Of a stretch of 64,000 bases of DNA, positions 16,429 through 63,606 are shown piece by piece (the first letter of the stretch is position 1; every line of letters begins with the position of its first letter). Both the position numbers and the translations under genes were made by a program. The notes under the pieces were generated by a model. That model did not search any database, was not told where the DNA came from, and saw only the letters and a list, made by a program, of their open reading frames with translations. The stretch is from positions 186,001-250,000 of the IMG/VR virus record IMGVR_UViG_3300033153_013547. One strand, written 5' to 3'.

Positions 16429-17209
16429 CATGGCAACAAAAAAGGCAAGAAAAAAAAGAAAGATCTCTGATGCCCAGAAACAAAAAGAAGCAAGAATCAC
16501 AGAATTAGTGATTGAGTACCAGAATGGTAGTGTTGCATCTGATGAATTATTGGATTACTACAACAACTTGTTTAATGCCTATAAATCTTTACTTAAAGAT
16601 GGGAATTACAGGGTCAATAGCAAAAGTGTGACGGAATTTGTCAAATTATTCATGGGAGACAAGGTATCACGTCGAAAAACAAAAAGATACAAGGTTTATA
16701 GTGAATTTTACAACACAGTAAATCATATAAGATATTATATGCAGGATCTTGATGCCAAAGACATAGAACATGAGCTCAAAGTCATATTTCTAACTCTTGC
16801 TAAAAATTGGAAGAAGATGGAGGGAATCGTATTTACAGGATACATAAATGGATTATTTCACTACTATGTCAAGGACTGGGTTAAACGCCACATGACTGGC
16901 GTTCCTAAAGACAAAGATCAAGAAGACATTAATTCTCTCACAAACGTCGTTGCTGATCATGAAGATCCTGCTGATATTGTTATTTCTGACGATATTGACG
17001 AAGACTGGGTTGTAGGACTTACTTGTAAATGGCCATGGACAGAACTAACCAAAGAAGAAAGAGAAGATGTTGTCCTACTTTGGCAAAAAAAGCTCAATCG
17101 TAAAGAATATGCCTATCTCAAGTGTATGAGGCAGTTGGCAGATGTTAGTACAAGAAAAAAACAGATCAAAGACAAGATCAGAACAATTATTAACAAAGGA
17201 AAACAATGA
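16421..17209 (+). CDS. phage sigma-70-like RNA polymerase sigma factor
   Basis: Region-2-like LVIEYQNG...ELLDYY and DIEHELKVIFLTLAKNW...FTGYI; region-4-like ELTKEERE...RKEYAYL. Confidence 0.55.
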   Translation: MYSMATKKARKKRKISDAQKQKEARITELVIEYQNGSVASDELLDYYNNLFNAYKSLLKDGNYRVNSKSVTEFVKLFMGDKVSRRKTKRYKVYSEFYNTVNHIRYYMQDLDAKDIEHELKVIFLTLAKNWKKMEGIVFTGYINGLFHYYVKDWVKRHMTGVPKDKDQEDINSLTNVVADHEDPADIVISDDIDEDWVVGLTCKWPWTELTKEEREDVVLLWQKKLNRKEYAYLKCMRQLADVSTRKKQIKDKIRTIINKGKQ

Positions 17210-17469
17210 TTGACATAAACAAAGTAAAAATGATCAAGAACAAAGTGTTGATAAAGAAAAATGCCCTGGAAGACATTGTACTAAACTCAGGTATTATTAT
17301 TACTAAAGGAGTTCAACAAAGAACCAACAATGGTGTGGTTTTGAGTGTTGGACCAAAGGCAAAATCTGTCAATGTGGGAGACCATGTATGCTTTGTGAAT
17401 TTGATCTGGGATATAAGTGCTGATTATGTTGTTGTGCTAGACAAAGATGTTATTTTGAAATGGAGTTAG
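17206..17469 (+). CDS. groES: GroES/Cpn10 co-chaperonin (copy 1)
   Basis: NKVLIK...NSGIII...GVVLSVGP...VNVGDHV...VVVLDKDVI. Confidence 0.85.
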   Translation: MIDINKVKMIKNKVLIKKNALEDIVLNSGIIITKGVQQRTNNGVVLSVGPKAKSVNVGDHVCFVNLIWDISADYVVVLDKDVILKWS

Positions 17470-18455
17470 CCCCACATCTCCAAAAAATCATTTTTTAGAT
17501 TTAGCTCTTCTCCTAATATTCCATCCATATAAGGTATAATCTGATCTATAGCATCAGATACAGCCTGTTTGACATTCTTTGTTTCAGTCATTTTTACTTT
17601 GAGACCTGTAACCAATGCTTGGGTGATAGGATGAAGAACTTCCTCCTGCTTATCAAATGTCAACGAGTAATTCATCGCATACGCGGCGTTCGATGCGACT
17701 TCAAATATATCGTCAGGATCAGGTAAATCAATTTTCCCATAGGCACTTCGTAACACCGAAACAGATAAAATGCAATCACATTCAATATCTGCATAATGCA
17801 TAAAATTACTCACACTACCATCTGGAACTAATTCCAAGGTTCCGCCATCTATAAATTTACGTGTTCCAATATCCATTGGTCTAAATACACATGGAATAGC
17901 ACTCGACGCTCGCACAAGATCAGATAGTCTCAAGGTAGGTTCGTAAACAAAATTCCACTTGTTCTCCTTGATTACCTCTTGGCTCACAAACTGAAAATCA
18001 TATGGAGGAACACCATCAATAGCTGCTGTGGTAATTAATAATGGGAGATCTACATCTATCATGAGCTTTTTGTTATAAAGTTTTTCTAAAGCTTTATGAA
18101 GGGCAGTCCCTCTCAATAAACCTGTGAAATCAGAATTCTTTCTAAACTTACCCAATATTGGTAGCCTATCTAAAATATATTGTGTAAGATCTTGATCAAG
18201 AATATTTTTCTTCTTGAATTTAGAAATAGCGTCAATCATTTGTTTAATAACAAAGGGATCTTCTAAGACTTTTTTATGATTGAGGGCAATATGAGCTGCT
18301 GCTATAGCCCCTCCAGAGGCTCCTGCAACAGCCACCAACTCTACTTTATCTTTCAGAAGATTACTAAGAATATAATAAGCACCTATACCTGCAGCATAGC
18401 TTTTTAGAGAACATACAGAAATTGATAATGCAATTTTTTTTCTACTCATTGGCAA
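17466..18455 (-). CDS. patatin-like phospholipase
   Basis: GASGG nucleophile elbow, ASSAIPCVFRP and catalytic DGG motif. Confidence 0.85.
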   Translation of the reverse strand: MPMSRKKIALSISVCSLKSYAAGIGAYYILSNLLKDKVELVAVAGASGGAIAAAHIALNHKKVLEDPFVIKQMIDAISKFKKKNILDQDLTQYILDRLPILGKFRKNSDFTGLLRGTALHKALEKLYNKKLMIDVDLPLLITTAAIDGVPPYDFQFVSQEVIKENKWNFVYEPTLRLSDLVRASSAIPCVFRPMDIGTRKFIDGGTLELVPDGSVSNFMHYADIECDCILSVSVLRSAYGKIDLPDPDDIFEVASNAAYAMNYSLTFDKQEEVLHPITQALVTGLKVKMTETKNVKQAVSDAIDQIIPYMDGILGEELNLKNDFLEMWG

Positions 18456-18468
18456 TTATGTTCTCCCT

Positions 18469-18726
18469 TTAATTTGTGTTGCCATTTTTCTTGATAAGAC
18501 TAAGAAAACCAGGAAATTTATACAGGTTTGCTGAGGAAATCACACCCAAAGTCAAAATATACAAATAGGGATCAGCAGAAATTTGTATTAGCTCAGGATA
18601 CCAAATAATCATTATTTTACTAGCCCAAGACAAAATAATATTTAGGGCTAGCAAACTAAATGAAGCTATGATCAATGACATATGCAATGCACTAATTTTA
18701 TCTGATCCTCTGCGTCTTTCTGTCAT
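18469..18726 (-). CDS. putative holin (2 TM helices)
   Basis: Charged N-terminus MTERRRGSD, two hydrophobic segments, basic C-tail; lies downstream of the endolysin. Confidence 0.5.
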   Translation of the reverse strand: MTERRRGSDKISALHMSLIIASFSLLALNIILSWASKIMIIWYPELIQISADPYLYILTLGVISSANLYKFPGFLSLIKKNGNTN

Positions 18727-18907: not shown

Positions 18908-19660
18908 TCAATAAGTCAGTATACCATACAAACTACTAATTTTTCTTTCTCTAATATAAACTCCTCCACCTTCTCTTGATCCTGATGGATTAGTATTCCC
19001 TTCAATAGTTACTACATAACCTGGTCTATCAGATAATCGAACGATAAATCCAATATGTCCAACTCTCTTCAGTTTTTTATAATATAACAAAAAACATGCC
19101 CCTGGCTTGATCAATTTCCAATCAGCAAGCAAAGAATTGACAGGCAACCATGTTTTAGATTTCTTAGCTGCATTTAACCAACTTGGAGTGTATCCTTTAT
19201 ATGCTGTGGGAATTTTTATAGGAGAGGATTTGCCCAAGGTTGCTGCAGCTTCTGCAATACACCACCATGTAAAGGCAGCACACCATGGTTGAGGAGAATC
19301 ATAGCCAGCAGATTTCAAATATTTCTTTACTGGTCCCCAATTGCTATTTTTAGGCACTTCTCTAACACCATTTTCTTCAAGAGCTATTTCCAGTGCCTTT
19401 TTCATCATACCTTTAGGTTTAGCAGTATTCCATCCTGGTACTTGAGAATTGTTGAGAGCCCACCAAGTTGCTGGTCCAACTATTCCATCTATTTCCAGTG
19501 GAAGATCATCTGGTCCATCACACTTGGCTTGAAAATCTAATACAGATTCCAGTGTTTTAGGACCAAATATACCATCTACTACAATCTTGAAACCAACTGA
19601 TTTCAATAGACGTTGTAGTTTTTTTACAGGTGCACCCTTAGTACCAATTGTGATCCACAT
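18908..19660 (-). CDS. endolysin: PG_binding_1 domain plus CHAP domain
   Basis: VKKLQRLL...VDGIFGPKT...DGIVGPATW (PG binding); PWCAAF, GHIGFI, TIEGNT (CHAP Cys/His); GGAGGA RBS. Confidence 0.9.
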   Translation of the reverse strand: MWITIGTKGAPVKKLQRLLKSVGFKIVVDGIFGPKTLESVLDFQAKCDGPDDLPLEIDGIVGPATWWALNNSQVPGWNTAKPKGMMKKALEIALEENGVREVPKNSNWGPVKKYLKSAGYDSPQPWCAAFTWWCIAEAAATLGKSSPIKIPTAYKGYTPSWLNAAKKSKTWLPVNSLLADWKLIKPGACFLLYYKKLKRVGHIGFIVRLSDRPGYVVTIEGNTNPSGSREGGGVYIRERKISSLYGILTY

Positions 19661-20010: not shown

Positions 20011-23000
20011 TTACCCTGCCCATATCCTTATACCAATCCACTCAACATAGACATTTATCAATTCCATAGTTGGTCCAGGGGCAGGTATATCATTTCCTAC
20101 TGCCCATACCCCTATTCTCAAGCCACCATTAGTAGCAACAGTTGGAAGTGTTATGTTCCATGAGGCTTCATACCATGTATCATTAGCCATGTTCCCAAGC
20201 ACATCTGTTCTTCCTCTGGTTGTTATGGCATTAGCATTTGAAACATCATTCCACCACAAATAGAATTTATCCAAATAACTAACATCATTCACTTTTATCC
20301 TTGCCCTAATAGTTGCATCACCACCATTAGCCCATGCTTTGATTGGCACACCTATTGATACTTCAGACTGCTCATATGTAGGAACATCATCTCTTCGTGC
20401 CATCCATGACCATATTCCATGAGCATCTGTGCATCCATAATTAGCTCCAAAAGTGAAACCATATACTGGAGCAGCAGTTACTGTGGCTGCTGCAGTTTCC
20501 CCACCATGAGCAGTCATATCAGAATACCATCTTAGCCCACCTTCAGCATCTTCAGCAAGGTCTTGACCTTGGAAAACTTCTCCATTTTCAATACCTAATT
20601 GATGAACTTTTCCATTTGGGTCTACACCTTTGAAACGATTGTCATTGCTGTCATTGATCCATTGCCCATAATTAGCAATTATATCAGGGAGACCCAGATT
20701 TTGTTCCCTAGTAGAAAGAACACCCTCAACAGTTAGTAAAGTTACTGGTGCTGCTGTTCCTATACCAATTCTATCAAGACCAGCATCCAAGAAGAATAAA
20801 TTAGCATCTCCAGTAGAAGCCATCCTCCAATTGAAATCCCCTGCAGCATTATTGATCACAGTATCTGCCGTAGGTTGTCTTAACACATATTGGGTATGAA
20901 CATCTCCAACAGCAAGATTGTTCAATACATTGTGATCAATAGCAGTTTCATCTAAATCTATAGTAACAAAGTCCCCACCATCTGTGTAGGTTAAGGGTGT
21001 TAAAGTTCTCAAAACCCCATCATTAGAAGCTGCACCAATATATCCTGCTGTTGCTGCTGCATCTATTTTTACTTTTTCATCTGCTCCTCCTCCTGCTCCC
21101 CAACTAAGGACACCCCCACCATTTGTTTGTAAGACATCTCCTGCTCCACCATCAGCATTGGGTAACACCCAAATTTGATCTGCTCCTAGAGCAGGAGCCT
21201 CAAATCCTACATAATTAGTGCCTTCATAAAATCTACACTCACCTTGATCTTTGATCAGAACGTTTGTTGCTACTTGTAATTGGTCAGTTACATTTGTGCC
21301 TGTATAAGTAATTGTTCCAGAGGTTGAGTTGTTGATCAATACACAATCATGCAACTCTACAGTGCCACTGCTACTTGACTTTACATCATCATCTGTGGCA
21401 TTGAATACACAATTATCTGCATAAATATAGGCATTATCACCAGATGCATTGCTACCATAACTACTGGCTGCTGCACTTTCAGTAACCAATGTAGAACAAT
21501 TGTATAAATACAGAAAAGCATCATTAGAGGAACCATTATCATAACAATAAAATCCCCGTCCAGAGCCGCCACCAATAGAAAGCGTAGTTTGCACATTATA
21601 ACAACGTAGAGTGGTGGCTGCCTCAGAACTTGCAGTAGTATAATAGTAAATACCATAACAAGAATTATCAGTGGAAGTAATATTTATAGTTGTGTCCCAG
21701 ATCTCACCACTGGCACACAAGAAATAAATACCTCTCTGAATGCCAGTATGACTGTTCATATTTATCTCAACATTTTGGATAAAAATGTCAGTCAAATTAT
21801 TTCCACCACTACCATCAGCTCTGATACTATAACAACCTGCAGCAGTGACATCAATAGTTAGATCTCTGATACACACATGGCTAACAATAATATCAAAAAT
21901 GCTCTTACTGTCTGTAACACAGGTAATTGTAGTAATGCCCTTGCCCTGGCCAACAATAGATATACTTTTAGTAATATCAATATTGTCTGTAATAGTATAT
22001 GTGCCAGCAGCCAATACCAGAGTGTCACCTGCAGTTGCTGCGGTTATGGCAGCATCAATATCATCAGTAATATCTAAATAAGTAATGTTGCTACCAGTAA
22101 TCTCAAGATTTTTTGTAGTTGTTTTCCCAGTGGTGATTAGGTTTTCGTCATCAAAACTGATATCTCCACCAGTGGCAGTTATCTCAAGATCTGCACTTAC
22201 TGCAGCGATATGACATATATCTGGGATAGTGGTTGTTGTAAAACTTAGATAATTAGTATTATCACCACTTGCTTTTAGATTGAAAGATCCTGTGGTTTTG
22301 AAGTCAAAATTACCACCATCTGAATTAACGCCGTCATGTTCTAAAACATCTCCATCATGAAGATGTGCAGGTATGGGCCCCCAAGACAGAACTCCTGCTC
22401 CATTGGTTATCAATAGATCATTGAGATTTCCATCAACAGCAGGTAATACCCAGATCTGGTCCGCACCTAATGCTGGAGCCTCAAATCCTACATAATTAGC
22501 ACCCTCATAAAAACGAAGTTCGTTGTTGGAACCTCCAATAAGTATGTTGCCACTTGTCTGCAAACTATGAATATCTACATCCCCATTCTTATCCCATTCA
22601 TAGAGTGTAACAACACCAATCTTCATTGTAGTAGGTATTGGTGCCCCTGGGTCTGGGTTGGCTGTTCTGATAATTTTTATCCAATAGCCTGCACTTGTTT
22701 CTGCACCACCTGGGTCTCCATTATTTGTCCAGAGAGCAGATATGTCTTCTAAGGGCCAGTGAATAAGCCCTGATTTCTGGAAACCATCTGTGGCATCTTC
22801 TGGATAAAATTGTGTCCAAGTATCTGCTGCTGTATTATACCAAAAAGTTGGGGTCACAGGCTTTGTCCCTGGTGTCCCCATAACAACTTCTATTTCTGAA
22901 AATTGAGAAGTAGAGCCAATATAAACCTCATCATTTTTTTTCACAAAACATTCTATGCCATCTATACCATCAGCCCAATTTACTCCACTATTGATTTTTC

Positions 23001-24705
23001 TACCAGCATATTCTGTCTGTGAAGGAGAGGCATAAGTGCCAATATGTTGATGAATAGGTGCAACATAAGCATGAACACCCAGCCCCACAATCTTCCCACT
23101 TGGCTCACCATTAGCAGTAGAAACATCAAAGAAATGAATATGTGAATTGGCATGTTGCAAACTTACATCAGCAATAGCATCATAAGCAGTAAAAAGTGCT
23201 CCTGCTGTGTTTGGAACAGAGAAGTCATGATGAATGTCTCCCTCTGTAATATGAATTGCATCTGTATTAGCTCTTGCTGGGCCAATAAGACCAGAAGGCA
23301 TTACAATCCTAATACCCTCAAGGCTTTCTGGAACATTAGACGCATCTACTCCACTCAAATTAACGGCTATTCCTCTAATTCTTGTGTCTGCTCCAGTGGG
23401 GTCTAAAGCATCACCCAAAATACGAAGACAAGTAAGATGAGCCTCAGCATCCAGTGCAACTTGGTTCTGTATGTCTATAATTTGATTACCTGTTCCAGTA
23501 GCAATAGATGGCTTTACTTCAAGTGCTCCTGTGAGTGGATCATTTGAACAATCTAACTTTAGAAAAGTAGCATCTACTTCTGCTTCTGTGTAATATCTAT
23601 TATCTAACTGCCCAGCATCAAGTTCTACTTGAGTATAAAATCTTGCTTCTGGGTCTTGCCAGGCAGGAATGCCTGCTGCTATACCAAGATAATCACCTGC
23701 ACTGCCTATACCAAGTCTTGTGGGTGTGCCTGTGTTGTTAGAGGAATAAATAATGTCTCCAGTGGTTGTAAGGGGGTTGGTTATTGCTGCTACCCATGCT
23801 GTATTGTTGCCATAATACATGGTGTGGGTATCTTCTGCATAAATTACTTTGCTCTCATCATCTGCTGTCCATGTTGGTAAAGTTTCTGCACGTTCTATTT
23901 CACAATATCCATTGAAATAACTTACTGGTAGCTCAAATCTTGAAAGGGTATTCCCCTCCACATATATTTCTATAGTTGGATCAACAACTGAAGAACCCTC
24001 AAGATCATCAACTATAATGGCATGTAGTTTTACAACAATTCTATCTGTCTGGCTGATCAAATGATCCCTGAGTTTGATCTCAAGATTGAATTCTTCTTGG
24101 GGTATGTATTCAGATGGTATAGTGTCAGACGTTTCTCTCTGTAATTCTGGAGATAATTGACTAATTGCCAATAGGGTTTCTACCCCAGTTTCACTCCTGG
24201 AGTAAATATCATAATATAGTCTTATGCCTCTATATTGAGCACTTATTCTCAATGCATGAATATGCATGTGAGCTATTCCATCACCAATTACTTCAACTCC
24301 AGGAACACCTACGTCTGTGATCCATTGACCTATAATATTGTCTTCATATGTAAGCACAAAACGTAGAGCTGTTACATTGTTGGGTGATCTTGTCTCCAAC
24401 ATTTCCATGTAATCAGTTACATCAGAAGTGGATTCATCTGAATATAAATAATAATATATGGAATTAGGGTTGTGTCCTAATGGTTCCCATCCAAAATAAT
24501 CTCCTGAATAATTTACTCCTTCATTTCTTTCATATATCAAGGAACCCTGTCTTCTTTCTGTCCAGTGGGGTAAAGATAACAATCTACGGATAAGTGATCC
24601 ATTTTGTGTAAGAGTATTGACTGTATTCCTAACCAACGTTTGTTGCTTGTTGATTAGTTCTCTTTTCAGGGATTCTTGTGATTGAGCCATGAACACTACA
24701 TCCAA
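20011..24705 (-). CDS. tail fibre / receptor-binding protein with pectin-lyase-like beta-helix (likely start ATG 24690)
   Basis: Fibre motifs LTTTGDIIY...RLGIG, RYYTEAEVD and RIGIGTAAP; beta-helix entry IDAAITAATAGDTLVLAAGTYTI; internal repeat. Confidence 0.8.
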   Translation of the reverse strand: MDVVFMAQSQESLKRELINKQQTLVRNTVNTLTQNGSLIRRLLSLPHWTERRQGSLIYERNEGVNYSGDYFGWEPLGHNPNSIYYYLYSDESTSDVTDYMEMLETRSPNNVTALRFVLTYEDNIIGQWITDVGVPGVEVIGDGIAHMHIHALRISAQYRGIRLYYDIYSRSETGVETLLAISQLSPELQRETSDTIPSEYIPQEEFNLEIKLRDHLISQTDRIVVKLHAIIVDDLEGSSVVDPTIEIYVEGNTLSRFELPVSYFNGYCEIERAETLPTWTADDESKVIYAEDTHTMYYGNNTAWVAAITNPLTTTGDIIYSSNNTGTPTRLGIGSAGDYLGIAAGIPAWQDPEARFYTQVELDAGQLDNRYYTEAEVDATFLKLDCSNDPLTGALEVKPSIATGTGNQIIDIQNQVALDAEAHLTCLRILGDALDPTGADTRIRGIAVNLSGVDASNVPESLEGIRIVMPSGLIGPARANTDAIHITEGDIHHDFSVPNTAGALFTAYDAIADVSLQHANSHIHFFDVSTANGEPSGKIVGLGVHAYVAPIHQHIGTYASPSQTEYAGRKINSGVNWADGIDGIECFVKKNDEVYIGSTSQFSEIEVVMGTPGTKPVTPTFWYNTAADTWTQFYPEDATDGFQKSGLIHWPLEDISALWTNNGDPGGAETSAGYWIKIIRTANPDPGAPIPTTMKIGVVTLYEWDKNGDVDIHSLQTSGNILIGGSNNELRFYEGANYVGFEAPALGADQIWVLPAVDGNLNDLLITNGAGVLSWGPIPAHLHDGDVLEHDGVNSDGGNFDFKTTGSFNLKASGDNTNYLSFTTTTIPDICHIAAVSADLEITATGGDISFDDENLITTGKTTTKNLEITGSNITYLDITDDIDAAITAATAGDTLVLAAGTYTITDNIDITKSISIVGQGKGITTITCVTDSKSIFDIIVSHVCIRDLTIDVTAAGCYSIRADGSGGNNLTDIFIQNVEINMNSHTGIQRGIYFLCASGEIWDTTINITSTDNSCYGIYYYTTASSEAATTLRCYNVQTTLSIGGGSGRGFYCYDNGSSNDAFLYLYNCSTLVTESAAASSYGSNASGDNAYIYADNCVFNATDDDVKSSSSGTVELHDCVLINNSTSGTITYTGTNVTDQLQVATNVLIKDQGECRFYEGTNYVGFEAPALGADQIWVLPNADGGAGDVLQTNGGGVLSWGAGGGADEKVKIDAAATAGYIGAASNDGVLRTLTPLTYTDGGDFVTIDLDETAIDHNVLNNLAVGDVHTQYVLRQPTADTVINNAAGDFNWRMASTGDANLFFLDAGLDRIGIGTAAPVTLLTVEGVLSTREQNLGLPDIIANYGQWINDSNDNRFKGVDPNGKVHQLGIENGEVFQGQDLAEDAEGGLRWYSDMTAHGGETAAATVTAAPVYGFTFGANYGCTDAHGIWSWMARRDDVPTYEQSEVSIGVPIKAWANGGDATIRARIKVNDVSYLDKFYLWWNDVSNANAITTRGRTDVLGNMANDTWYEASWNITLPTVATNGGLRIGVWAVGNDIPAPGPTMELINVYVEWIGIRIWAG
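21097..22521 (-). repeat. intragenic direct repeat (~48 aa; copies 21097-21240 and 22377-22521)
   Basis: RFYEGxNYVGFEAPALGADQIWVLP..DG...D.L.TNG.GVLSWG occurs twice; identical 25 nt ggagcctcaaatcctacataattag at 21194 and 22475. Confidence 0.9.
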
Positions 24706-26736: not shown

Positions 26737-27024
26737 TTACTCATCATCCAAATACTCAGGCTCATATTCTTCCCCATCCATATATGCCTGTATTTTTTTA
26801 TATGCTTGTTTTCTATTGTTGTCAGCCTCAGCATTTTTCTCTGCATTCTCTGCTGCTTTTCTTAATATTGTGGTTGTTTTGTATTTCAACACTTCTTCTA
26901 CTCGTGAATCTGGCTGATCATCTCTCCATGCCTTACATTTAGGACAGCATTCCATAGACTTTGGATGAATATAATCATGCTCACATTCACAATCCCAATA
27001 CCTTGGATCAAGTTCAATAGTCAT
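26737..27024 (-). CDS. Cys/His-rich (zinc-binding) phage protein
   Basis: WDCECEHDYIH...CPKC. Confidence 0.6.
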   Translation of the reverse strand: MTIELDPRYWDCECEHDYIHPKSMECCPKCKAWRDDQPDSRVEEVLKYKTTTILRKAAENAEKNAEADNNRKQAYKKIQAYMDGEEYEPEYLDDE

Positions 27025-28360: not shown

Positions 28361-28882
28361 TTATTTCTTCAAGTTTCTATCCAAATCCAGCATACGAATT
28401 ATGATTTGCTGGGGATTGATATCAGATCCTTTGCTACGATTGAACGATTTATCAACCATCATCATATTTGACACGGTTGTTTGACCGCCTTTTGAATATG
28501 GTATCACATGATCTGCATCCATATTGCTCAATGCCTTATCAAGATTATAGTATGTTTTGTCTGTCATAGGACATTGCATGCCTTGTTTGGCAGCAACTTC
28601 TGCACGTATTTTATCACTAAAAATACGCTTACTTCCACCAGCAAATCGTCCATTATAAATGAATCCTGCTATATTGATCACATTTGCCACACAATATGTT
28701 GCAAGCAATAGACCAATAGTCATTCCCAAGATGTTTTTGTTAGCATTTTCTATAACTATGTAACCATCTTTGTAATAGTTTTGCACAAGAAACTTTGCAT
28801 TTTCGTATGATAATCTGCCATCACGAACTAATTGTCTGATGTCTTGATAGTCTATACGATAGCCCGTGTCCTTCTGTTTCAT
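28361..28882 (-). CDS. membrane-associated HNH endonuclease
   Basis: Hydrophobic ILGMTIGLLLATYCVANVINIAGFIY, then DADHVIPYSKGGQTTVSN...NRSKG (HNH). Confidence 0.75.
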   Translation of the reverse strand: MKQKDTGYRIDYQDIRQLVRDGRLSYENAKFLVQNYYKDGYIVIENANKNILGMTIGLLLATYCVANVINIAGFIYNGRFAGGSKRIFSDKIRAEVAAKQGMQCPMTDKTYYNLDKALSNMDADHVIPYSKGGQTTVSNMMMVDKSFNRSKGSDINPQQIIIRMLDLDRNLKK

Positions 28883-28898
28883 TTACTTTTACCTCAAG

Positions 28899-41054: not shown

Positions 41055-41372
41055 TTATTCCATTCCTAAATCTATACCTTCAGTGCTATCAACAGTCCCA
41101 ACTATGTTTTCTTCTTTGGCTACAAATAGAGCTTGTCCATCCTCTATGATCTCAGTAGTCCCAAACTTTCTGAATAATACTATCTGATCTGTTTTTAGCT
41201 CTTCTTTACAATCAGGACCTACACTCATTACTATACCAAGAGCAAGTCTGTCTCTCACACCCTCTCTTTCTACCACTGATTCTGGTATAATAACTCCACC
41301 ATCTGTTTTCTTCTCTGATGGTTCAACAGCTAATTTCAAAACAACTCTATCAAACAGAGGTATGACTGTCAT
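41055..41372 (-). CDS. groES: GroES/Cpn10 co-chaperonin (copy 2, most canonical)
   Basis: PLFDRVVL...KTDGGVIIP...GIVMSVGP...VLFRKFGTTEI...EENIVG; AAGGAG RBS before MTVIPL. Confidence 0.9.
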   Translation of the reverse strand: MTVIPLFDRVVLKLAVEPSEKKTDGGVIIPESVVEREGVRDRLALGIVMSVGPDCKEELKTDQIVLFRKFGTTEIIEDGQALFVAKEENIVGTVDSTEGIDLGME

Positions 41373-46549: not shown

Positions 46550-47253
46550 GCATGCCTATCACTTACATAAAACTCAATCACTTTATCCACTGGTAATTTT
46601 ACTATATGTCTCTTGAGAATTGGAGAATCATTGTGAGGATCAGTGGGCACAGCAGCCACCAAAGAATCCATATCTACCTTTATATCTGCTATATGAACAC
46701 CACCAGTGCCTGCATCTCCAGCCTTGACATAGGCATCATAAATATCAGGATGACTGCTCAAGTCAGGCTCAAAACCTATGTGTGATGATTGTGTTCTATA
46801 TTCTATATCATAACCAGCAGTAACAACAGCATAAACTGCATTGCCACCAAATCTACTAGTGCTTCTAAAAGCAACAGACCCCACTATGTGAGTCTCTTGA
46901 CCCTTAGACGTATGCACAATAAGCAGACACTGCTTGTCCACAAACTGCAAGTCTGCATTGTTATGTAATTTGATAGTGGTCTTGTTAGGAATAAAGCATC
47001 TATATCTCATATCATACAAATCTGCCATTACATTGTTGTCAACATGTTTAGGTCTTACATCAAAATAGAATAACCATGATTCATCATCATAATATATTCC
47101 ACATTCTATGATATGATCTGTACACAATTGCATATCATAATATAGTTCAACTTGTCTTGTTGGAACAGTAGATTCTTCTGAGTCATTGATGGAGACCATT
47201 ATGTCTTTATCACTGGGTCTCAGAGACACTTTGTGCAAATTATCATGAGGCAT
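46546..47253 (-). CDS. hypothetical protein
   Basis: 235-aa ORF with AAGGA RBS. Confidence 0.6.
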   Translation of the reverse strand: MPHDNLHKVSLRPSDKDIMVSINDSEESTVPTRQVELYYDMQLCTDHIIECGIYYDDESWLFYFDVRPKHVDNNVMADLYDMRYRCFIPNKTTIKLHNNADLQFVDKQCLLIVHTSKGQETHIVGSVAFRSTSRFGGNAVYAVVTAGYDIEYRTQSSHIGFEPDLSSHPDIYDAYVKAGDAGTGGVHIADIKVDMDSLVAAVPTDPHNDSPILKRHIVKLPVDKVIEFYVSDRHA

Positions 47254-47701
47254 AATAATTATCCTTTTCCATCCAGTAATAAATGCTGGACCAACTGGTA
47301 ACTAACCAGTCTCTATCAAGGTTATATTTTAGTCTATTTAGCACCACACTGAAACTTCCAAATCCTATGATCATGCCAGGCTTTAGCCTTTTATTGCCAC
47401 ATGAGTAGACTATTCCTTCATAACAGTCATTATTTCCAAACTTATAAGCCAATGTGTGTATTACTACATGAGATTTTGTCATAGGAACAGAATATTCTAC
47501 ATCCACCGTGCCATTATCCAATACTTTTAGCGTTTCTTTATCAACAGAGGAATCCTCAGGCAAAACTGATACCATATCTGATTCTTCTCTAAACAGTTTC
47601 TGCCTCTCACGTGTTAGCAAAGGAATAACTATTATGTTATCTCCAAAAGCCTTGATCTCACCAAAATTTTTTATGATCAGTTTTTTATTCTTCATCTTCA
47701 T
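47243..47701 (-). CDS. divergent GroES-like protein with long insertion (copy 3)
   Basis: IKAFGDNIIVIPL...YEGIVYSCG...LKPGMIIGF...WLVTSWSSI, reminiscent of T4 gp31-type co-chaperonins; start uncertain (ORF open to 47794). Confidence 0.5.
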   Translation of the reverse strand: MKMKNKKLIIKNFGEIKAFGDNIIVIPLLTRERQKLFREESDMVSVLPEDSSVDKETLKVLDNGTVDVEYSVPMTKSHVVIHTLAYKFGNNDCYEGIVYSCGNKRLKPGMIIGFGSFSVVLNRLKYNLDRDWLVTSWSSIYYWMEKDNYYAS

Positions 47702-52391: not shown

Positions 52392-52875
52392 ACCTTGTTC
52401 CCATCCATCTACAGACAATTAATCCAGAATTGATCTTTTCATAATTCACACAAATATCCAAAAACTGATCAACAGTAGCAATAGCACTATCAGTTCCTGC
52501 TGTTTTTAGTGCTCTTGCAAATATTTGCCTATTTTTATCCTGATCTATTACACCACGAATATTCTCCATTACATTCCACTTTTGAGCCATTTGTCTAATA
52601 CAAGTCCAGTGAGTCATCAATATAGGATCCTTGTTGATATTACGTCCATATCCACGAATTGTGGGTAGTTCAGAGGCACCAGCCTGCTTAAATACTTTTG
52701 ACATACTACGTATTATGCTTGATCCCTTACAATAAAAATAATCAGTTCCTGGTAACTCATCACGTTTAACTACAATAGCTGTTGTTGATCTCATCCTTGT
52801 ATCTTTAGGTAATTTGATCAAATAGTAATTATTACCACATATACTAACTTTGCCAATTATATTGTTATCCATCAA
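52384..52875 (-). CDS. hypothetical protein between the two split-intein halves
   Basis: AAAGGA RBS; overlaps the IntN stop and the IntC start; no recognisable endonuclease motif. Confidence 0.7.
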   Translation of the reverse strand: MMDNNIIGKVSICGNNYYLIKLPKDTRMRSTTAIVVKRDELPGTDYFYCKGSSIIRSMSKVFKQAGASELPTIRGYGRNINKDPILMTHWTCIRQMAQKWNVMENIRGVIDQDKNRQIFARALKTAGTDSAIATVDQFLDICVNYEKINSGLIVCRWMGTRYE

Positions 52876-54541: not shown

Positions 54542-54599
54542 ATCCTCTCCACTATATTTCTTTTGTCTCAGTAGCTTCTTTGTCTAATGGTTCTCTCAT

Positions 54600-54917
54600 T
54601 CAGTCTGCTTCTTTGTCAAACAACTGGGGCATCATGGATTCTAACATATCTGTTACATCATCTAACCTTTCCTTTAGTATATCAATCTTTTCTTCCAGTG
54701 CTTCAAGCTTCTGACTCATGTCTTCTGTATAGATCACATGGGTTGGAGCAGGAGGATAACCACCATCAGGATAAGGTAAGGGAGTACCAATAAATGAGTC
54801 AGGAATTAGTGGATCCTGCTTCCATGTATAATCAGTTGTTCCACTATCTGTGATTTCTATCCAATTGTGATCATTGGTGCGGTAAATTCCATGCATACTA
54901 TTATCATCACTAAACAT
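54600..54917 (-). CDS. hypothetical protein with coiled-coil C-terminus (paralogue of 55539-55910)
   Basis: KLEALEEKIDILKERLDDVTDMLESMMPQLFDKEAD. Confidence 0.65.
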   Translation of the reverse strand: MFSDDNSMHGIYRTNDHNWIEITDSGTTDYTWKQDPLIPDSFIGTPLPYPDGGYPPAPTHVIYTEDMSQKLEALEEKIDILKERLDDVTDMLESMMPQLFDKEAD

Positions 54918-54925
54918 TTACACTC

Positions 54926-55564
54926 TCACTTCCTTTGGTAATTGTGCGCCAATAATTGTATATCATCACTATGACGCAAACCTACTTTCTCTAACCTCTC
55001 TGCCTCGCGTTTTATTACATACAAACACAATGACGGCTTAGCAAGTAACATTCGCTTTGTTGCAGTAAAGGCATAATCATTACAATAACCATAATAACCA
55101 CCCTTACACAAATTATCTAATTTGTGGGCATAACGTTTGCCTGCAGAGGTAAGATCTAGTCTATAGGTGAATTTTTCATTCCACTCTAACATTTGAAAGG
55201 GAAATTCTGCCACATAATGACTTTCTATGTATGCCCTATATGGATCAAGTAAATAAGCATGTCGACCTGCATTTATTCTGGTAGTCTTGATCATCCCAAA
55301 TGCCACTAAATAATTTATTGCTTCAAATAGTTGCTTACTACATGCACCATACTTTGTCATAATAAAATCATTTTTCAGATTTATTTTATTATGCCTATGT
55401 CCTAGTATACCTATACCAGGATGCATGTAAAGACACAGATAAGTCATGTCATCAAGACCCAGCACAGGTTTACTATTGTTATAAAACAGTATTCTAACAA
55501 CATAATCACGTATACCAAGGTCTAGAGGTTGCCATGTATTACCATTCATGAGCACTATCCTCAT
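54926..55564 (-). CDS. winged-helix protein, YwgA/Panacea(SocA)-like
   Basis: YGACSKQLFEAINYLVAFGMI...LDLTSAGK pattern. Confidence 0.4.
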   Translation of the reverse strand: MRIVLMNGNTWQPLDLGIRDYVVRILFYNNSKPVLGLDDMTYLCLYMHPGIGILGHRHNKINLKNDFIMTKYGACSKQLFEAINYLVAFGMIKTTRINAGRHAYLLDPYRAYIESHYVAEFPFQMLEWNEKFTYRLDLTSAGKRYAHKLDNLCKGGYYGYCNDYAFTATKRMLLAKPSLCLYVIKREAERLEKVGLRHSDDIQLLAHNYQRK

Positions 55565-55910
55565 CTAACGATTTTCTCATCCAATCTGCTTCCTTATCAG
55601 ACAATTTTGGCATCGCAGATTCTAGCATATCTATTATGTCTTCTAACTTATCTTTTAGTATGCCAATATCTTCTTGCAATTTATCAATCTTTTCTGCCAT
55701 GGATAGAGGCATAGCATATGATAACATGTTGGACATCATTGCCTGTGTATCTATTGCAACATCATTGTTGGGATCATTAAGAACACGTAAATCATCAATA
55801 TGATAATCACCCTGCACTCTATTTACGTCTGCTACCAATCTTGCTCTTGCTGGCTCTGACAACGATGACCAATCAAAAGATTGCAGAATTTCACCATCGT
55901 AATATACCAC
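55539..55910 (-). CDS. hypothetical protein with coiled-coil C-terminus (paralogue of 54600-54917)
   Basis: KIDKLQEDIGILKDKLEDIIDMLESAMPKLSDKEADW. Confidence 0.65.
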   Translation of the reverse strand: MVYYDGEILQSFDWSSLSEPARARLVADVNRVQGDYHIDDLRVLNDPNNDVAIDTQAMMSNMLSYAMPLSMAEKIDKLQEDIGILKDKLEDIIDMLESAMPKLSDKEADWMRKSLDEDSAHEW

Positions 55911-57142
55911 TATTCTTCACCTATTCCAAAATCATCATAGCACACAGTAGATCTACCATAATTCAAAAACCTGCTAAACATCAGCCCATACTTTATTGGA
56001 TCAACACTAGTTATACCAAGTGAGTATGCTGCAATTGATCCTGCTCCAGAACCTCTGCCTGCACCCACACCAACATTCAGCGTCCTTGCAGTATCTACTA
56101 TATCAGACACTAAAAGAAAATAATCTACATAGCCCATCTTGTCAATAATGAACAATTCATGATCTAATCTATCAGTAATTTCTTTAGACAAATTCTGGCT
56201 ATAGAGTTGTCTGGCTCCATCATAGCATTTGTCTCTAAGAATTTTTGTCTTATATGCATATGAAAGTGTCTTGTCTCTGATCCTAAATTCAGGCATATAT
56301 GATTTGCCAAGAGCAAGTTTAAACTCTACCTTATCTACTATTTCCATTGTATTCTGACAAAGAGGGATTGCATCTATGCCCACACTATTATATCTTTCTA
56401 TAATTTCATCATATGAATGAAGATAATAAGAATGAGTGCCTGAGAATGGTTTAATACCTATTTTGTTAGATGAAGAAAACCTTACTGCCTGCAAGAAGCC
56501 ATGAGCCTTCCAGTCAGAAGCATTTAGATAATGGGCATCTGTGGCACAAATAGTTTTGATGCCCATCTCATTCAGAAATACTTCTGCCACAACCTTTTCT
56601 TCTGGAATATCATGTGCATGAACTTCAAGATAAAAATCTTCCTTGAAGGCTTCTACAAACCTATCAAGCAGGGTTTTATACACATCCATATGTCCTGATG
56701 TAATAAGCCTTTGCAGACTTCCAGATATACAACTTGCTGTTGCTATGAGACCTTCAGAATTCTGCAAAACGCTGTCCATGGGAAAAATCGTTCGGCTGAT
56801 ATTGTCTCTACCCACTCTCGTTTTAGAAGCACCCAAAAGCTTGAGAAGATTATGCCAGCCTGCTTCGGTCTTTGCTATCAGAACCAGATGTGACTTAGGA
56901 TATTCTATGCCAAAATCAGAGTTGATATACTTTACATAAGCTTCTATTGCTATAATAGGTTTAATACCATAATTCTCACATTCAATAGTTTGCTCAACAC
57001 AAGCACCCAATGAGCCATGATCACTTATGGAGACTGCTTTTTGTCCTAGTTCTATAGATCTTTTAATAATATCTTTGGGTCTTCCAAGGGCATCAAGAAC
57101 AGAATAAGAACTATGAATATGAAGATCACAGAATTCACTCAC
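55910..57142 (-). CDS. dnaE: DNA polymerase III alpha, N-terminal piece (PHP domain plus GS-motif segment)
   Basis: LHIHSSYSVLD, SDHG, HLVLIAK, SCISG, TDAHY, GRGSGAGS, DPIKYGLMFSRFLN; ends before the PDxDxDF motif. Confidence 0.93.
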   Translation of the reverse strand: MSEFCDLHIHSSYSVLDALGRPKDIIKRSIELGQKAVSISDHGSLGACVEQTIECENYGIKPIIAIEAYVKYINSDFGIEYPKSHLVLIAKTEAGWHNLLKLLGASKTRVGRDNISRTIFPMDSVLQNSEGLIATASCISGSLQRLITSGHMDVYKTLLDRFVEAFKEDFYLEVHAHDIPEEKVVAEVFLNEMGIKTICATDAHYLNASDWKAHGFLQAVRFSSSNKIGIKPFSGTHSYYLHSYDEIIERYNSVGIDAIPLCQNTMEIVDKVEFKLALGKSYMPEFRIRDKTLSYAYKTKILRDKCYDGARQLYSQNLSKEITDRLDHELFIIDKMGYVDYFLLVSDIVDTARTLNVGVGAGRGSGAGSIAAYSLGITSVDPIKYGLMFSRFLNYGRSTVCYDDFGIGEE

Positions 57143-57384: not shown

Positions 57385-58082
57385 TATGCATCTCCTGCAA
57401 CATCAAGACCACCAAATGTTTTCATGTCTGGCAGACTAATAGAAGGTTTTATGTCTTGATTACCTTGACTTGAGAATTGTTTATGCTCTTCTCTGCTACT
57501 AAATAAATCTAGATAGGTAGCATGGGCTATCATTATGGCTGCTGCAATAACTCCACCAACATCCTCCCTACCAAGAATTTTAGATCCCAACATAACACCT
57601 GTTAAGATCTCTTGTCTGTTATCATTTATTCCAAGCCGTTGATCCCTAGTAAATACTGGTAGCAAATGGAAGAGCATCTTAGACACAAAATCTACCCACA
57701 TATCAGTTACATCATAATATTTGTGCTTGCAAGACCCCAATATGAAATTGATAAATATTGCCGTCGTTACTACAGATTCTATGAGCAATGGATGCTCAAG
57801 ATCACCTAAATCAACGTCACTCAAAACTAATTGCATATCCAATGTTTCATTTAATTTACCACCATCAAAATCAAGCCTACGCAATTCGTTTGTTCCTGCT
57901 GATATGAATTCTTTACTGATACTATCTGCGGATTTGGTTATCATTTTGACAGCTTCTGCAGGAGTTAGTGTAACGACCTCAGCACCAGATTTCTCCTCTA
58001 GCTCAGATTCAATCTCACTCAAATCTTTTGCGTTTTTCATCCTAGACAATTTTCCACCCATAAGATCATTCAAAATTGACAT
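57384..58082 (-). CDS. hypothetical protein
   Basis: 232-aa coupled ORF. Confidence 0.6.
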   Translation of the reverse strand: MSILNDLMGGKLSRMKNAKDLSEIESELEEKSGAEVVTLTPAEAVKMITKSADSISKEFISAGTNELRRLDFDGGKLNETLDMQLVLSDVDLGDLEHPLLIESVVTTAIFINFILGSCKHKYYDVTDMWVDFVSKMLFHLLPVFTRDQRLGINDNRQEILTGVMLGSKILGREDVGGVIAAAIMIAHATYLDLFSSREEHKQFSSQGNQDIKPSISLPDMKTFGGLDVAGDA

Positions 58083-58519
58083 TATTTGTCTCCCTCAACA
58101 TCTATTGGAACTAGATCTACGGTAATACTCTTGACAGTATCATACTGTAGATTATTTATTATGTTTCTGCCTTCTATCAATTTGGCAGAAACCACAAAAC
58201 ACATGTTGTTAGACTCAATCTCCAACGATACATCATATAGTTTCTTACCATCTTCTACAATATAATCGTTGGCATCAACAACAATTACAGCATATATTGC
58301 TTGATCACAACAGAGCACTGGGTATATGCTGTTTCTAGTTATTCCTAATTCATGTAATATTTGATGATAAGCCTGTCCTAGCTGTATAAATGCTTCTGCA
58401 TTACCATGATCCATATCTGGATGAACTTCTTTAGCAAGCTTTTTATATGCTCTATCAAGAGACTGCTTGGACAATTTCTCCATCTTTTGCTTCAACAGAG
58501 CGTGATAATTCTGCTTCAT
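58082..58519 (-). CDS. DnaJ J-domain protein
   Basis: AYKKLAKEVHPDMDHGNAEAFIQLGQAYHQIL (HPD motif). Confidence 0.85.
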   Translation of the reverse strand: MKQNYHALLKQKMEKLSKQSLDRAYKKLAKEVHPDMDHGNAEAFIQLGQAYHQILHELGITRNSIYPVLCCDQAIYAVIVVDANDYIVEDGKKLYDVSLEIESNNMCFVVSAKLIEGRNIINNLQYDTVKSITVDLVPIDVEGDK

Positions 58520-61878: not shown

Positions 61879-62189
61879 ATATTTTCCTCTCCCTCAACAA
61901 CGATACTATCTATCGTTGAGAATGCATTATAAACCTTTTCTGCTGCAGATTGTATCTTGGCATTATCAATAACAGACATATCTTCTATTACTAGCAACAA
62001 ATCATAAGAAGTAAGCATAAGAGACTTTAGGAACTCTATGGCTGTGTGATTATCATTACACATACACCCAAACCCTGTTAGCAGCTTTCTAACAGTATCA
62101 CCAAATAATACTGGATCCTCACATTCATCAAAAATTTGGATCAGTGTAGCCATAAACACTCTTGATATTTCTGTAAGGTCATTAGACAT
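61875..62189 (-). CDS. hypothetical protein
   Basis: Coupled ORF. Confidence 0.55.
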   Translation of the reverse strand: MSNDLTEISRVFMATLIQIFDECEDPVLFGDTVRKLLTGFGCMCNDNHTAIEFLKSLMLTSYDLLLVIEDMSVIDNAKIQSAAEKVYNAFSTIDSIVVEGEENI

Positions 62190-62979
62190 AAGGACTCCAT
62201 GGTCTGCCTGATCTTTCCTCCATGATTATAGACAGATCTCTCATAACTTTAGTAAAAGTACTTGGATCCTTCTTAGAATCCAATTTGCTAAGATCATATT
62301 CATAGTCAATATTGTGTTCCTTCAACCACGCTGTAATTGCTTCCCAATCTGTTTTACCATCAGCTTTAGCAGCAATTCCAGCATTACGCCATGCTTGTGT
62401 AAACCTTACAAGATCTATAGTATTAACTTTACAGGTATCGTCTCCCTCCATGATATCTTTTAGCACGCTTCCTTTATACATTTGTAGTCCAATACCAAAA
62501 AGCGTAGCAGCCTTTTTCATAGCATCACTCACAGCACCTTTAATAGCAGTATCTACACCACCTGCTGTTACGGTGCAAGTGCCAGTATGAGACCTCTTCC
62601 CAACGCCTTCTATACCAATAGACACACATGCATTAACATATGGTTCTATTATTATATTAAGCTCCTGAACCACATAATACTGGTTCTTTATAGACACAAG
62701 TCTTTTTGCCCTAGGATCATCCGAGTCGCGCAATTTAACATATTCTTCCTTGCTAATTTTCGTTTTATCAAAAGACTTCAACATACAACCATCATGTAAT
62801 TCTACATTTTCTACGGTAAGATCCCATGGTATTCTCGCCTTATTTAGTATATCGATCACAACAGGTGGACGAATGTATTCATGACCACCATAATCTTTAT
62901 CTATATGTTTTTGATCTATAGAACCATAGAAAACAGAGTATGCCTTCTGTACTGTAGACACTGATTTTTCATTAACCAT
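62182..62979 (-). CDS. Rad52/Rad22 (Sak-like) single-strand annealing protein
   Basis: EYI...VIDILN...W...KGAVSDAMKKAATLFGIGLQMY. Confidence 0.85.
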   Translation of the reverse strand: MVNEKSVSTVQKAYSVFYGSIDQKHIDKDYGGHEYIRPPVVIDILNKARIPWDLTVENVELHDGCMLKSFDKTKISKEEYVKLRDSDDPRAKRLVSIKNQYYVVQELNIIIEPYVNACVSIGIEGVGKRSHTGTCTVTAGGVDTAIKGAVSDAMKKAATLFGIGLQMYKGSVLKDIMEGDDTCKVNTIDLVRFTQAWRNAGIAAKADGKTDWEAITAWLKEHNIDYEYDLSKLDSKKDPSTFTKVMRDLSIIMEERSGRPWSPYV

Positions 62980-63221
62980 TACAGACCTCCTGGTCCTTTT
63001 TTACCTAGTGGACATATGGGTCGTATCCACTGAATTTCTCCACCAGAGCAATAATCCAGAGCATATTGTTTAGCCTGTTCCACACTTTTAGCACTAACCA
63101 ACACCGTTGCTACCCCAGAATCACACAAAAAAGATTTTTCCAATAATAATACTCTTACTTCAAATGATCTCAACTTAGTACTTAAATATCCAACTCTGAT
63201 GATATGATGTTTATCTAACAT
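62979..63221 (-). CDS. DpnD/PcfM-like small protein
   Basis: FEVRV...VLVSAKSVEQAKQYA. Confidence 0.5.
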   Translation of the reverse strand: MLDKHHIIRVGYLSTKLRSFEVRVLLLEKSFLCDSGVATVLVSAKSVEQAKQYALDYCSGGEIQWIRPICPLGKKGPGGL

Positions 63222-63606
63222 ATGCTATCACATCTTTCTCCAGAACAATAACAATATCATCAGATACTTTAGTAGGCCTTGAATCATTTTCAAATGCTAT
63301 TAAATTTAGTAGATCAAGATGATACCTGCTACCTTGTCTAGCCTTTTGGTACATTTCCACAGCACCATCAATATCATCATTCAATATTTTGTTGAGCCAT
63401 CTATTTGGTCCTTTTATGATAACTTTTTGCCCTACAGTCACACTATTGATATCATTAGCTACAGCCAAAACAATACCACTTAAACTAGACACTTTGGTTG
63501 CCCCATAATCAGGTATTACTATTCCTGAATCCAAGACGTTGTCTATTGCTTTCATTCGTATCATCACAGCTTTGGAAGGAAGATTGATCTTTGAGTAATC
63601 CATCAT
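63211..63606 (-). CDS. GroES-like co-chaperonin with insertion (copy 4)
   Basis: AVMIRM...DSGIVIPD...GIVLAVA...VTVGQKVII...IVIVLEKDVIAYV. Confidence 0.75.
   Translation of the reverse strand: MMDYSKINLPSKAVMIRMKAIDNVLDSGIVIPDYGATKVSSLSGIVLAVANDINSVTVGQKVIIKGPNRWLNKILNDDIDGAVEMYQKARQGSRYHLDLLNLIAFENDSRPTKVSDDIVIVLEKDVIAYVR

What the first reader, a model, noticed from the sequence alone, without database searches (positions are those of the whole stretch)
17206..63606. Four GroES-like co-chaperonins in one window
Seen: GroES-type motifs at 17206-17469, 41055-41372, 63211-63606 and, more divergently, 47243-47701. Two have large insertions, and they sit in different transcriptional modules. No GroEL is present in the window. 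Established: T4 gp31 is an enlarged GroES used to fold the major capsid protein with host GroEL. Inference: a set of specialised or hetero-oligomeric lids that retune the chaperonin for different substrates or infection stages.
Basis: partly seen in the sequence, partly recalled or inferred. Interest (0 to 1): 0.65.

Follow-up and report, generated by a model that had tools for sequence, protein, structure and literature searches.

The report
Three phage GroES lids, not four
A 261-kb jumbo phage with no chaperonin of its own carries three diverged GroES-type lid genes, one of them enlarged by about 43 residues, and a J-domain co-chaperone. The fourth claimed lid cannot be told from chance, so this extends a known phage trick rather than revealing a new one.

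Summary
All four ORFs exist at the stated coordinates, in a complete 261,124-bp phage genome with terminal repeats.

- **Two are clear Cpn10/GroES proteins.** These are 17206-17469(+) at 35 bits and 41055-41372(-) at 52 bits, against a Pfam cut-off of 21.1.
- **A third, 63211-63606(-), is a diverged Cpn10.**
  - It scores below the Pfam cut-off.
  - Its best match is the first copy.
  - hhalign and the ESM Atlas place it among viral Cpn10 proteins.
  - It carries about 43 extra residues before the last strands.
- **The fourth, 47243-47701(-), is a real conserved gene with no Cpn10 signal above chance.**
  - Its scores are equalled by about 5% of control ORFs and shuffles.
  - Neither structure model was usable.

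The three supported copies keep the glycine plus three hydrophobic residues that bind GroEL. All three lack the full roof hairpin, as T4 gp31 does.

The whole genome has no Cpn60, Hsp70 or Hsp20. It does have a J-domain protein at 58082-58519(-).

The most likely function is capture of host GroEL. Specialised or mixed lids remain untested.

Jumbo phage CBB already has two copies, so this is a modest extension of a known kind. The host is unknown.

The parts
17206..17469 (+). p1: 87-aa Cpn10/GroES co-chaperonin without a roof hairpin. It is the last gene of the rightward block, and its ATG overlaps the stop of the upstream ORF 16421-17209.
   Evidence: Pfam Cpn10 35.3 bits against a cut-off of 21.1; PHROG 3188 and 931. 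46% identical over 57 aa to the 87-aa Cpn10 of Bacteroides phage SJC03. hhalign against bacterial GroES gives 90% probability.
17290..17301 (+). p1 mobile-loop motif G-I-I-I (residues 29-32), at the position of the GroEL-binding glycine plus hydrophobic tripeptide.
   Evidence: Translation; alignment to the GroES profile. The motif definition is taken from PMC5649160.
41055..41372 (-). p2: 105-aa full-length Cpn10/GroES. Its mobile loop is 6 residues longer than the bacterial one, its roof hairpin is 8 residues shorter, and it has an 11-residue acidic C-terminal tail.
   Evidence: Pfam Cpn10 52.1 bits over profile positions 2-92. hhalign 98.8%, with the two length differences visible. AGGAG ribosome-binding site before the ATG at 41372. 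Best solved-structure match is 7EKQ Cpn20, E 8e-12.
41286..41297 (-). p2 mobile-loop motif G-V-I-I (residues 26-29).
   Evidence: Translation; alignments.
63211..63606 (-). p4: 131-aa diverged, enlarged Cpn10. It is most like p1.
   Evidence: AGGAG ribosome-binding site.
63514..63525 (-). p4 mobile-loop motif G-I-V-I (residues 28-31).
   Evidence: Translation; alignment.
63268..63411 (-). p4 segment, residues 66-113. It sits between the 'VGQKVII' strand and the closing strands, where p1 has 7 residues, so p4 is about 43 residues longer there. It is probably partly helical.
   Evidence: Alignment of p4, p1 and p2; translation. Helices at 68-75 and 79-90 appear only in a low-confidence model.
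47243..47701 (-). p3: a conserved 150-152-aa gene of unknown fold. It is not supported as a GroES-like protein. It overlaps the end of the Lar-like ORF upstream and the start of a 235-aa ORF downstream.
   Evidence: One homologue at 57% identity on a separate 934-bp contig. No Cpn10 signal above chance. No usable model.
58082..58519 (-). 145-aa J-domain protein with an HPD motif. It is a second kind of co-chaperone, lying in the same leftward block.
   Evidence: Pfam DnaJ 30 bits against a cut-off of 27.8. ORF and the 'EVHPD' motif. No Hsp70 in the genome.

Best explanation
The phage encodes three Cpn10/GroES-family co-chaperonins (p1, p2 and p4) and no chaperonin of its own. Each most likely forms a ring that caps the host's GroEL through its conserved loop motif. 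All three lack a full roof hairpin. p2 has a longer loop and p4 carries about 43 extra residues, so each would give the GroEL cage a different shape, as T4 gp31 does for the T4 major capsid protein. Together with the J-domain protein, the phage supplies only the cheap regulatory parts and borrows the host's ATP-driven machines. p1 and p4 look like old paralogues of the type found in Bacteroides phages. p2 is closer to cellular GroES. The 47-kb protein, p3, is not part of this set on present evidence.

Shown: family membership of p1 and p2, homology of p4, the motifs, and the absence of Cpn60 and Hsp70 from the genome.

Inferred: ring formation, binding to host GroEL, the substrates, and any division of labour between the copies.
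For: - Pfam and PHROG hits for p1 and p2.
- Convergent evidence for p4.
- A G-hydrophobic-hydrophobic-hydrophobic motif at the aligned loop position in all three.
- Roof-hairpin gaps in all three.
- No Cpn60, Hsp70 or Hsp20 in the complete genome, but a J-domain protein is present.
- Literature: phage GroES proteins work with host GroEL and can replace GroES. Most phages that carry a chaperonin gene carry the co-chaperonin only. GroES without a roof hairpin is common in viruses (PMC5649160). Hsp10-only jumbo phages are predicted to recruit host Hsp60 (PMC7824862).
Against: - There is no functional or structural test. AlphaFold2 models of p4 and p3 were unusable, with pLDDT 34 and 32.
- The complex prediction of p4 with the E. 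coli GroEL apical domain gave no verdict.
- The host is unknown, so its GroEL is unknown too.
- p4 is below the Pfam cut-off, and its extra segment might prevent ring formation.
- p1, p4 and p3 have almost no relatives in the databases, so conservation cannot be used to argue for function.
Confidence: 0.62

Rival explanations
1. One reading: four lids including p3. p3 would be a GroES with a mobile-loop region of about 60 residues. The lids would form stage-specific rings or mixed heptamers that retune host GroEL for different substrates.
For: - A greedy profile alignment of p3 to the phage's own Cpn10 profile is collinear: 72 columns, with 'EGIVYSCGN' over 'NGVVLSVGP'.
- In the single homologue, both ends of p3 are conserved and the middle varies.
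- p1 sits in a different transcription block from the others.
- Mixed co-chaperonin rings exist in chloroplasts (PMC5780408) and are the best solved-structure match.
Against: - The p3 alignment has probability 1.4% and P 0.04.
- About 5 to 7% of unrelated ORFs and shuffles score as well.
- BLAST hits of p3 to GroES use two incompatible registers.
- p3 has no Pfam, PHROG or Atlas support.
- p2, p3 and p4 share one co-directional block.
- Nothing here tests mixing of subunits.
Confidence: 0.1
2. p3 carries an Ig-like beta-sandwich rather than a GroES barrel, and has an unrelated role in the replication or early block.
For: - The only profile hit in 1.84 billion proteins is a 2,796-aa protein of about 99-residue repeats.
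- That protein's tail weakly matches Big_1, Filamin and other Ig-like families.
- The shared pattern is 'FGN..Y.G.V....(gap)..G.G.F.V.L'.
- The low-confidence model is all-beta from residue 77 onwards.
Against: - The E-value of 3e-10 is the sum of 26 weak repeats. The best single repeat scores 13 bits, which is far from significant on its own.
- The Pfam hits on that protein are all below their cut-offs.
- There is no usable model.
Confidence: 0.15
3. One or more of the extra copies no longer acts as a folding lid. It could be a decaying duplicate, a protein that uses the GroES fold for another job, or a blocker that occupies host GroEL to shut down host protein folding.
For: - p4 is below the Pfam cut-off and has a large extra segment.
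- p1 and p4 have no close relatives that would show purifying selection.
- Moonlighting is described for chloroplast Cpn20 (PMC5780408).
Against: - All three keep an intact loop motif and the closing strands.
- The reading frames are intact, and p2 and p4 have strong ribosome-binding sites.
- At 33% identity between p1 and p4 the duplication is old, yet both frames remain open.
Confidence: 0.13

Closest known systems
T4 gp31 and RB49 CocO (phage co-chaperonins for host GroEL)
   Same: The genes are phage-encoded, and the phage has no GroEL. The roof hairpin is missing. The loop is lengthened in p2. One copy is enlarged beyond about 100 aa. p1 and p2 also hit PHROG 931 'head morphogenesis'. The features of gp31 and CocO are taken from PMC5649160.
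   Different: There are three paralogues here instead of one. The phage has no gp23-type capsid protein (Pfam Gp23 absent), so the substrate is unknown. The extra segment of p4 is much longer than the size difference between gp31 and GroES; that comparison rests on my own knowledge of the gp31 sequence and was not tested here.
Pectobacterium jumbo phage CBB (two GroES-like ORFs)
   Same: It is a jumbo myophage with more than one Cpn10 gene. Two matches pass the Pfam cut-off, far apart in the genome (PMC5259590).
   Different: CBB has two copies of about 96-99 aa, both close to standard length. Here there are three, one of them 131 aa. No sequence kinship between the two phages was seen.
Cpn10 of Bacteroides phages SJC03 and DAC16-23
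   Same: It is 87 aa and lacks the roof hairpin. It is the closest relative of p1, at 44-46% identity.
   Different: SJC03 has a single copy. The structural and replication genes of this phage instead resemble those of Moorella phage MTATph1 and Bacillus phage 0305phi8-36, which have no copy and one copy respectively.
Chloroplast Cpn10/Cpn20 co-chaperonins (Chlamydomonas CPN11/20/23, PDB 7EKQ)
   Same: Several diverged Cpn10 paralogues sit in one system. This is the best solved-structure match for p2 and for the p4/p1/p2 profile, E 8e-12. The matched Cpn20 domain also lacks the roof segment in the alignment.
   Different: The chloroplast proteins form proven mixed rings and include tandem two-domain subunits (PMC5780408). 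Here all copies have a single domain, and no mixing has been shown.

Membership tests
Cpn10/GroES (Pfam PF00166) | Sequence match to the family profile above the curated cut-off of 21.1 bits | tested here: met
   p1 scores 35.3 bits and p2 scores 52.1 bits. This row applies to p1 and p2 only.
Cpn10/GroES (Pfam PF00166), for p4 | Sequence match to the family profile above the curated cut-off | tested here: inconclusive
   p4 scores 18.1 bits, E 0.0027, below the cut-off. Homology is backed by BLASTP to p1 at E 1e-6, hhalign at E 5e-5, a bacterial GroES HMM at E 0.008 and rank 3 of 1,499, and Atlas features at 0.94 with 211-217 shared.
Cpn10/GroES (Pfam PF00166), for p3 | Any sequence match to the family profile | tested here: not met
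   No Pfam or PHROG hit. 0.4 bits against the GroES HMM. Piecewise ranks of 36 to 793. The deletion scan is equalled by about 5% of controls. hhalign probability is 0.5 to 1.4%.
Cpn10/GroES | GroES beta-barrel fold | tested here: inconclusive
   For p4, the Atlas's own model (pLDDT 0.59) aligns to an 87-aa GroES cluster with TM 0.75 by the match and 0.53 by the query, over residues 5-131. My AlphaFold2 model failed at pLDDT 34. For p3, both models are unusable, at pLDDT 0.38 and 32. p1 and p2 were not modelled.
Cpn10/GroES | Mobile loop with a glycine followed by three hydrophobic residues that bind GroEL | tested here: met
   p1 has GIII, p2 has GVII and p4 has GIVI, each at the aligned position. 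p3 has no aligned equivalent.
Cpn10/GroES | Forms a heptameric ring and binds GroEL in the presence of nucleotide | not testable with these tools
   The one complex prediction, p4 with E. coli GroEL residues 191-376, gave no verdict. The host GroEL is unknown.
gp31-type viral co-chaperonins | Roof hairpin deleted, and the phage lacks its own GroEL | tested here: met
   Between the 'VG' strand and the 'VGD' strand there are 7 to 9 residues, against about 16 in bacterial GroES. This holds in all three copies. No Cpn60 in the genome.
gp31-type viral co-chaperonins | Required for folding of the phage's major capsid protein | not testable with these tools
   No Gp23-family capsid protein was found. 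The capsid gene was not identified.

The most novel reading that the evidence does not exclude
The three Cpn10 paralogues form a division-of-labour system on host GroEL, either as stage-specific lids or as mixed heptamers. The enlarged p4 would reshape the cage for particular phage substrates, and the set would work alongside the phage J-protein. This would be a viral counterpart of the chloroplast Cpn10/Cpn20 system. In the most generous version, p3 is a fourth and extremely diverged member.
Probability: 0.15. Interest if true: 0.7.

Novelty: new variant of a known kind. Interest (0 to 1): 0.38.

Why it matters
Phage GroES proteins are the classic case of a virus retuning a host folding machine, but only single-copy systems (gp31 and CocO) have been studied. 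A phage with three old, very different lids would offer a natural experiment. It lacks any ATP-driven chaperone, one of its lids carries a 43-residue addition, and it also encodes a J-protein. The question it could answer is whether lid shape selects the substrate of GroEL, and whether mixed lids exist outside chloroplasts. The practical value is modest until the host is known.

Tried and rejected
- **AlphaFold2 on p4.** A 3-row alignment gave pLDDT 34, which is unusable.
- **AlphaFold2 on p3.** A 2-row alignment gave pLDDT 32, also unusable. No fold search was run on these models because the matches would be meaningless.
- **Complex prediction.** p4 with E. coli GroEL residues 191-376 gave no verdict, score 0.02. 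This is evidence neither for nor against binding.
- **Word-index protein searches.** p1, p3 and p4 found only themselves plus one p3 homologue.
- **Full profile search of p3.** Apart from p3's own cluster it found only a repeat protein whose score is a sum of weak repeats.
- **IMG/VR scans.** The p4/p1/p2 alignment and p2 alone both found nothing.
- **Near-identical DNA search against phages.** No match.
- **A possible fifth copy.** The genome ORF at 30572-30901(-) scored E 0.067. I rejected it on inspection because it looks helical and unrelated.
- **High-scoring control ORFs in the deletion scan.** These were an acidic helical protein and a hexapeptide-repeat protein, which shows what such scores are worth.
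- **Promoter scan.** The number of matches equalled chance.
- **tblastn census of multi-copy GroES phages.** It was too insensitive, with one place in every record.
- **Relatives of the virus record.** The genome search does not draw relatives for a virus record.
- **Rfam.** No match in the window.

No genetic code other than table 11 was used.
Full report
**Setting**

The window is bases 186001-250000 of a 261,124-bp virus record with direct terminal repeats. The record is rated complete and has 38% G+C. It is a contractile-tailed jumbo phage:
- The portal and tail sheath lie outside the window.
- The sheath and the DnaE-like polymerase are most like those of Moorella phage MTATph1 and Bacillus phage 0305phi8-36, at about 30% identity.
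- No near-identical DNA was found in the phage collection.
- The host is not known.

**The four ORFs**

All four ORFs are at the stated coordinates.

*p1, 17206-17469(+), 87 aa*
- It passes the Pfam Cpn10 cut-off, 35.3 against 21.1 bits.
- It hits PHROG 3188 'co-chaperonin GroES' and PHROG 931 'head morphogenesis'.
- Its nearest relative is the 87-aa Cpn10 of Bacteroides phages SJC03 and DAC16-23, at 44-46% identity.

*p2, 41055-41372(-), 105 aa*
- It matches the whole Cpn10 profile at 52.1 bits.
- It matches an alignment of 80 bacterial GroES at 98.8% probability.
- Its best bacterial matches reach only 31-38% identity and are spread over many phyla, so they do not name a host.
- The ATG at 41372 follows an AGGAG site.

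*p4, 63211-63606(-), 131 aa*

On its own it is below the Pfam cut-off, at 18.1 bits and E 0.0027. Five further lines agree that it is a Cpn10:
- BLASTP to p1 gives 33% identity over 63 residues, E 1e-6.
- In a set of 89 GroES-type sequences, p1 is its best match.
- It ranks third of 1,499 genome ORFs, after p2 and p1, against a bacterial GroES HMM.
- hhalign gives E 5e-5.
- Its last strand, 'VSDDIVIVLEKDVI', matches 'ISADYVVVLDKDVI' of p1.

The ESM Atlas adds an independent view:
- By features, 27 of its 30 hits belong to the Cpn10 family set. The top three are viral clusters of 110-121 aa, at score 0.94 with 211-217 shared features.
- The Atlas's own model of p4 aligns to an 87-aa GroES cluster over residues 5-131, with TM 0.75 by the match.

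I take p4 as a diverged Cpn10 with roughly 90% confidence.

**Anatomy of the three copies**

| Copy | Loop motif | Roof hairpin | Other length differences |
|---|---|---|---|
| p1 | GIII | absent | none |
| p2 | GVII | 8 residues shorter than bacterial | loop 6 residues longer; 11-residue acidic tail |
| p4 | GIVI | absent | residues 66-113 where p1 has 7, about +43 |

- Each copy has, at the aligned loop position, a glycine followed by three hydrophobic residues. This is the motif that contacts GroEL (PMC5649160).
- Between the 'VG' strand and the 'VGD' strand they have 7 to 9 residues, where bacterial GroES has about 16. The roof hairpin is therefore gone in p1 and p4 and cut by 8 residues in p2.
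- The same loss is described for gp31, CocO and several abundant marine viral GroES clusters (PMC5649160).
- The extra segment of p4 lies between the 'VGQKVII' strand and the closing strands.
- Helices in that segment appear only in a low-confidence model.
- The copies are old. p1 and p4 share 33% identity. p1 and p2 share 32% over 31 residues. p2 and p4 are not linked by BLAST.

**p3, 47243-47701(-)**

p3 is a real gene. A 154-aa homologue at 57% identity sits on an independent 934-bp contig with a different neighbour. As a GroES it fails every test I could run:
- No Pfam or PHROG hit.
- 0.4 bits against the GroES HMM.
- Ranks of 36 to 793 among about 800 ORFs for each of five pieces of the profile.
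- hhalign probability of 0.5%.
- No Cpn10 among its Atlas neighbours.

- The best result was 4.9 bits against bacterial GroES, reached by 5 of 93 genome ORFs of similar size and by 6 of 100 shuffles.
- Against the phage's own copies the best was 6.8 bits, reached by 3 of 93 ORFs and 7 of 100 shuffles.
- The best-scoring controls are plainly unrelated proteins.

Weak BLAST hits use two incompatible registers. The resemblance is therefore real to the eye but is what roughly one ORF in twenty gives.

The structural test failed, with pLDDT 32 for my model and 0.38 for the Atlas model.

The full profile search gave only p3's own cluster and a 2,796-aa protein with Ig-like repeats. Its E-value of 3e-10 is the sum of 26 weak repeats, and the best single repeat scores 13 bits. 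This is a lead for an Ig-like fold, not a finding.

**Rest of the genome**

- There is no Cpn60/TCP1, no Hsp70 and no Hsp20.
- There are no further Cpn10 copies.
- A 145-aa J-domain protein with an HPD motif lies at 58082-58519(-), between p3 and p4.

The phage thus carries four co-chaperone genes and no ATP-driven chaperone. This fits a strategy of steering host GroEL and host Hsp70. Iyer and colleagues made the same inference for Hsp10-only jumbo phages and for J-proteins (PMC7824862).

**Gene arrangement**

- p1 is the last gene of the rightward block 158-17469. That block holds three very large ORFs with no known family and a RuvC-like gene.
- The start of p1 overlaps the stop of the upstream ORF.
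- p2, p3 and p4 all lie in the long leftward block. That block holds the polymerase, primase, UvsX-like recombinase, dNMP kinase and methyltransferases.
- 'Different modules' therefore separates p1 from the rest, not all four from each other.
- The promoter scan was no better than chance.

**Comparison with what is known**

- Phage co-chaperonins that use host GroEL are textbook knowledge: gp31 and CocO.
- Most phages that carry a chaperonin gene carry only the co-chaperonin, 165 of 175 in one count (PMC5649160).
- Two copies in one jumbo phage are already reported for CBB (PMC5259590), and I confirmed this with the Pfam profile.
- The nearest phages have fewer copies. SJC03 has one. 0305phi8-36 has one. 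MTATph1 and Bacillus phage WH1 have none.
- Mixed co-chaperonin rings are proven in chloroplasts (PMC5780408). The Chlamydomonas Cpn20/11/23 complex, 7EKQ, is the best solved-structure match to p2 and to the profile of the three copies.

What is new here is the number of copies, the 131-aa form with its added segment, and the pairing with a J-protein. These make a variant of a known kind, not a new kind.

**Limits**

- The complex job gave no verdict.
- Only table 11 was used.

Noticed in passing
window 58082-58519 (-): A 145-aa J-domain protein with an HPD motif (Pfam DnaJ 30 bits, cut-off 27.8). The genome has no Hsp70, so this is a second kind of co-chaperone that presumably recruits the host's Hsp70.
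   Followed up: partly
window 51297-57142 (-): A DnaE-like DNA polymerase III alpha is split over three ORFs. ORF 55910-57142 covers profile positions 42-440, ORF 52865-54541 covers 433-793, and ORF 51297-52418 covers 794-1042 of PHROG 405. Unannotated ORFs lie at the junctions: 54926-55564 between the first two pieces, and 52384-52875 overlapping the ends of the last two. Rfam finds no intron there. Whether this is a true split or the result of mobile insertions is open.
   Followed up: partly
window 4292-15656 (+) and 20011-24705 (-): Four very large ORFs of 1835, 904, 1047 and 1564 aa have no Pfam hit; PHROGs, run on the three rightward ORFs only, gave none either. They may be virion or tail-fibre proteins, but nothing shows it.
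   Followed up: no
window 17466-18455 (-): A patatin-like phospholipase (47 bits) converges on p1 and overlaps its stop by 4 bases. An endolysin with PG_binding_1 and CHAP domains lies next to it at 18908-19660 (-).
   Followed up: no
window 28361-36009 (-): A cluster of DNA-modification and nuclease genes. It holds an EcoRI-type adenine methyltransferase (423 bits, 30738-31682), an N6/N4 methyltransferase (35026-36009), a GmrSD_N plus HNH protein (29358-30440) and an HNH endonuclease (28361-28882).
   Followed up: no
window 46546-47253 (-) and 47685-48266 (-): p3 overlaps both of its neighbours. Upstream is a Lar-like restriction-alleviation protein, and downstream is a 235-aa ORF with no known family. 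A terminator-like hairpin follows at 46464-46477. The three may form one translationally coupled unit.
   Followed up: no
L008:3225-6446 (genome 103225-106446, outside the window): The ribonucleotide reductase large subunit is 1,073 aa and has a weak internal HNH-endonuclease match. This could be an intein or another insertion.
   Followed up: no
L098 (934-bp contig of run SRR22452319): This is the only other place where a p3 homologue is seen, at 57% identity. Its upstream gene there is a homologue of window ORF 26737-27024 (-), not the Lar-like gene. A related phage therefore exists with a different gene order.
   Followed up: partly
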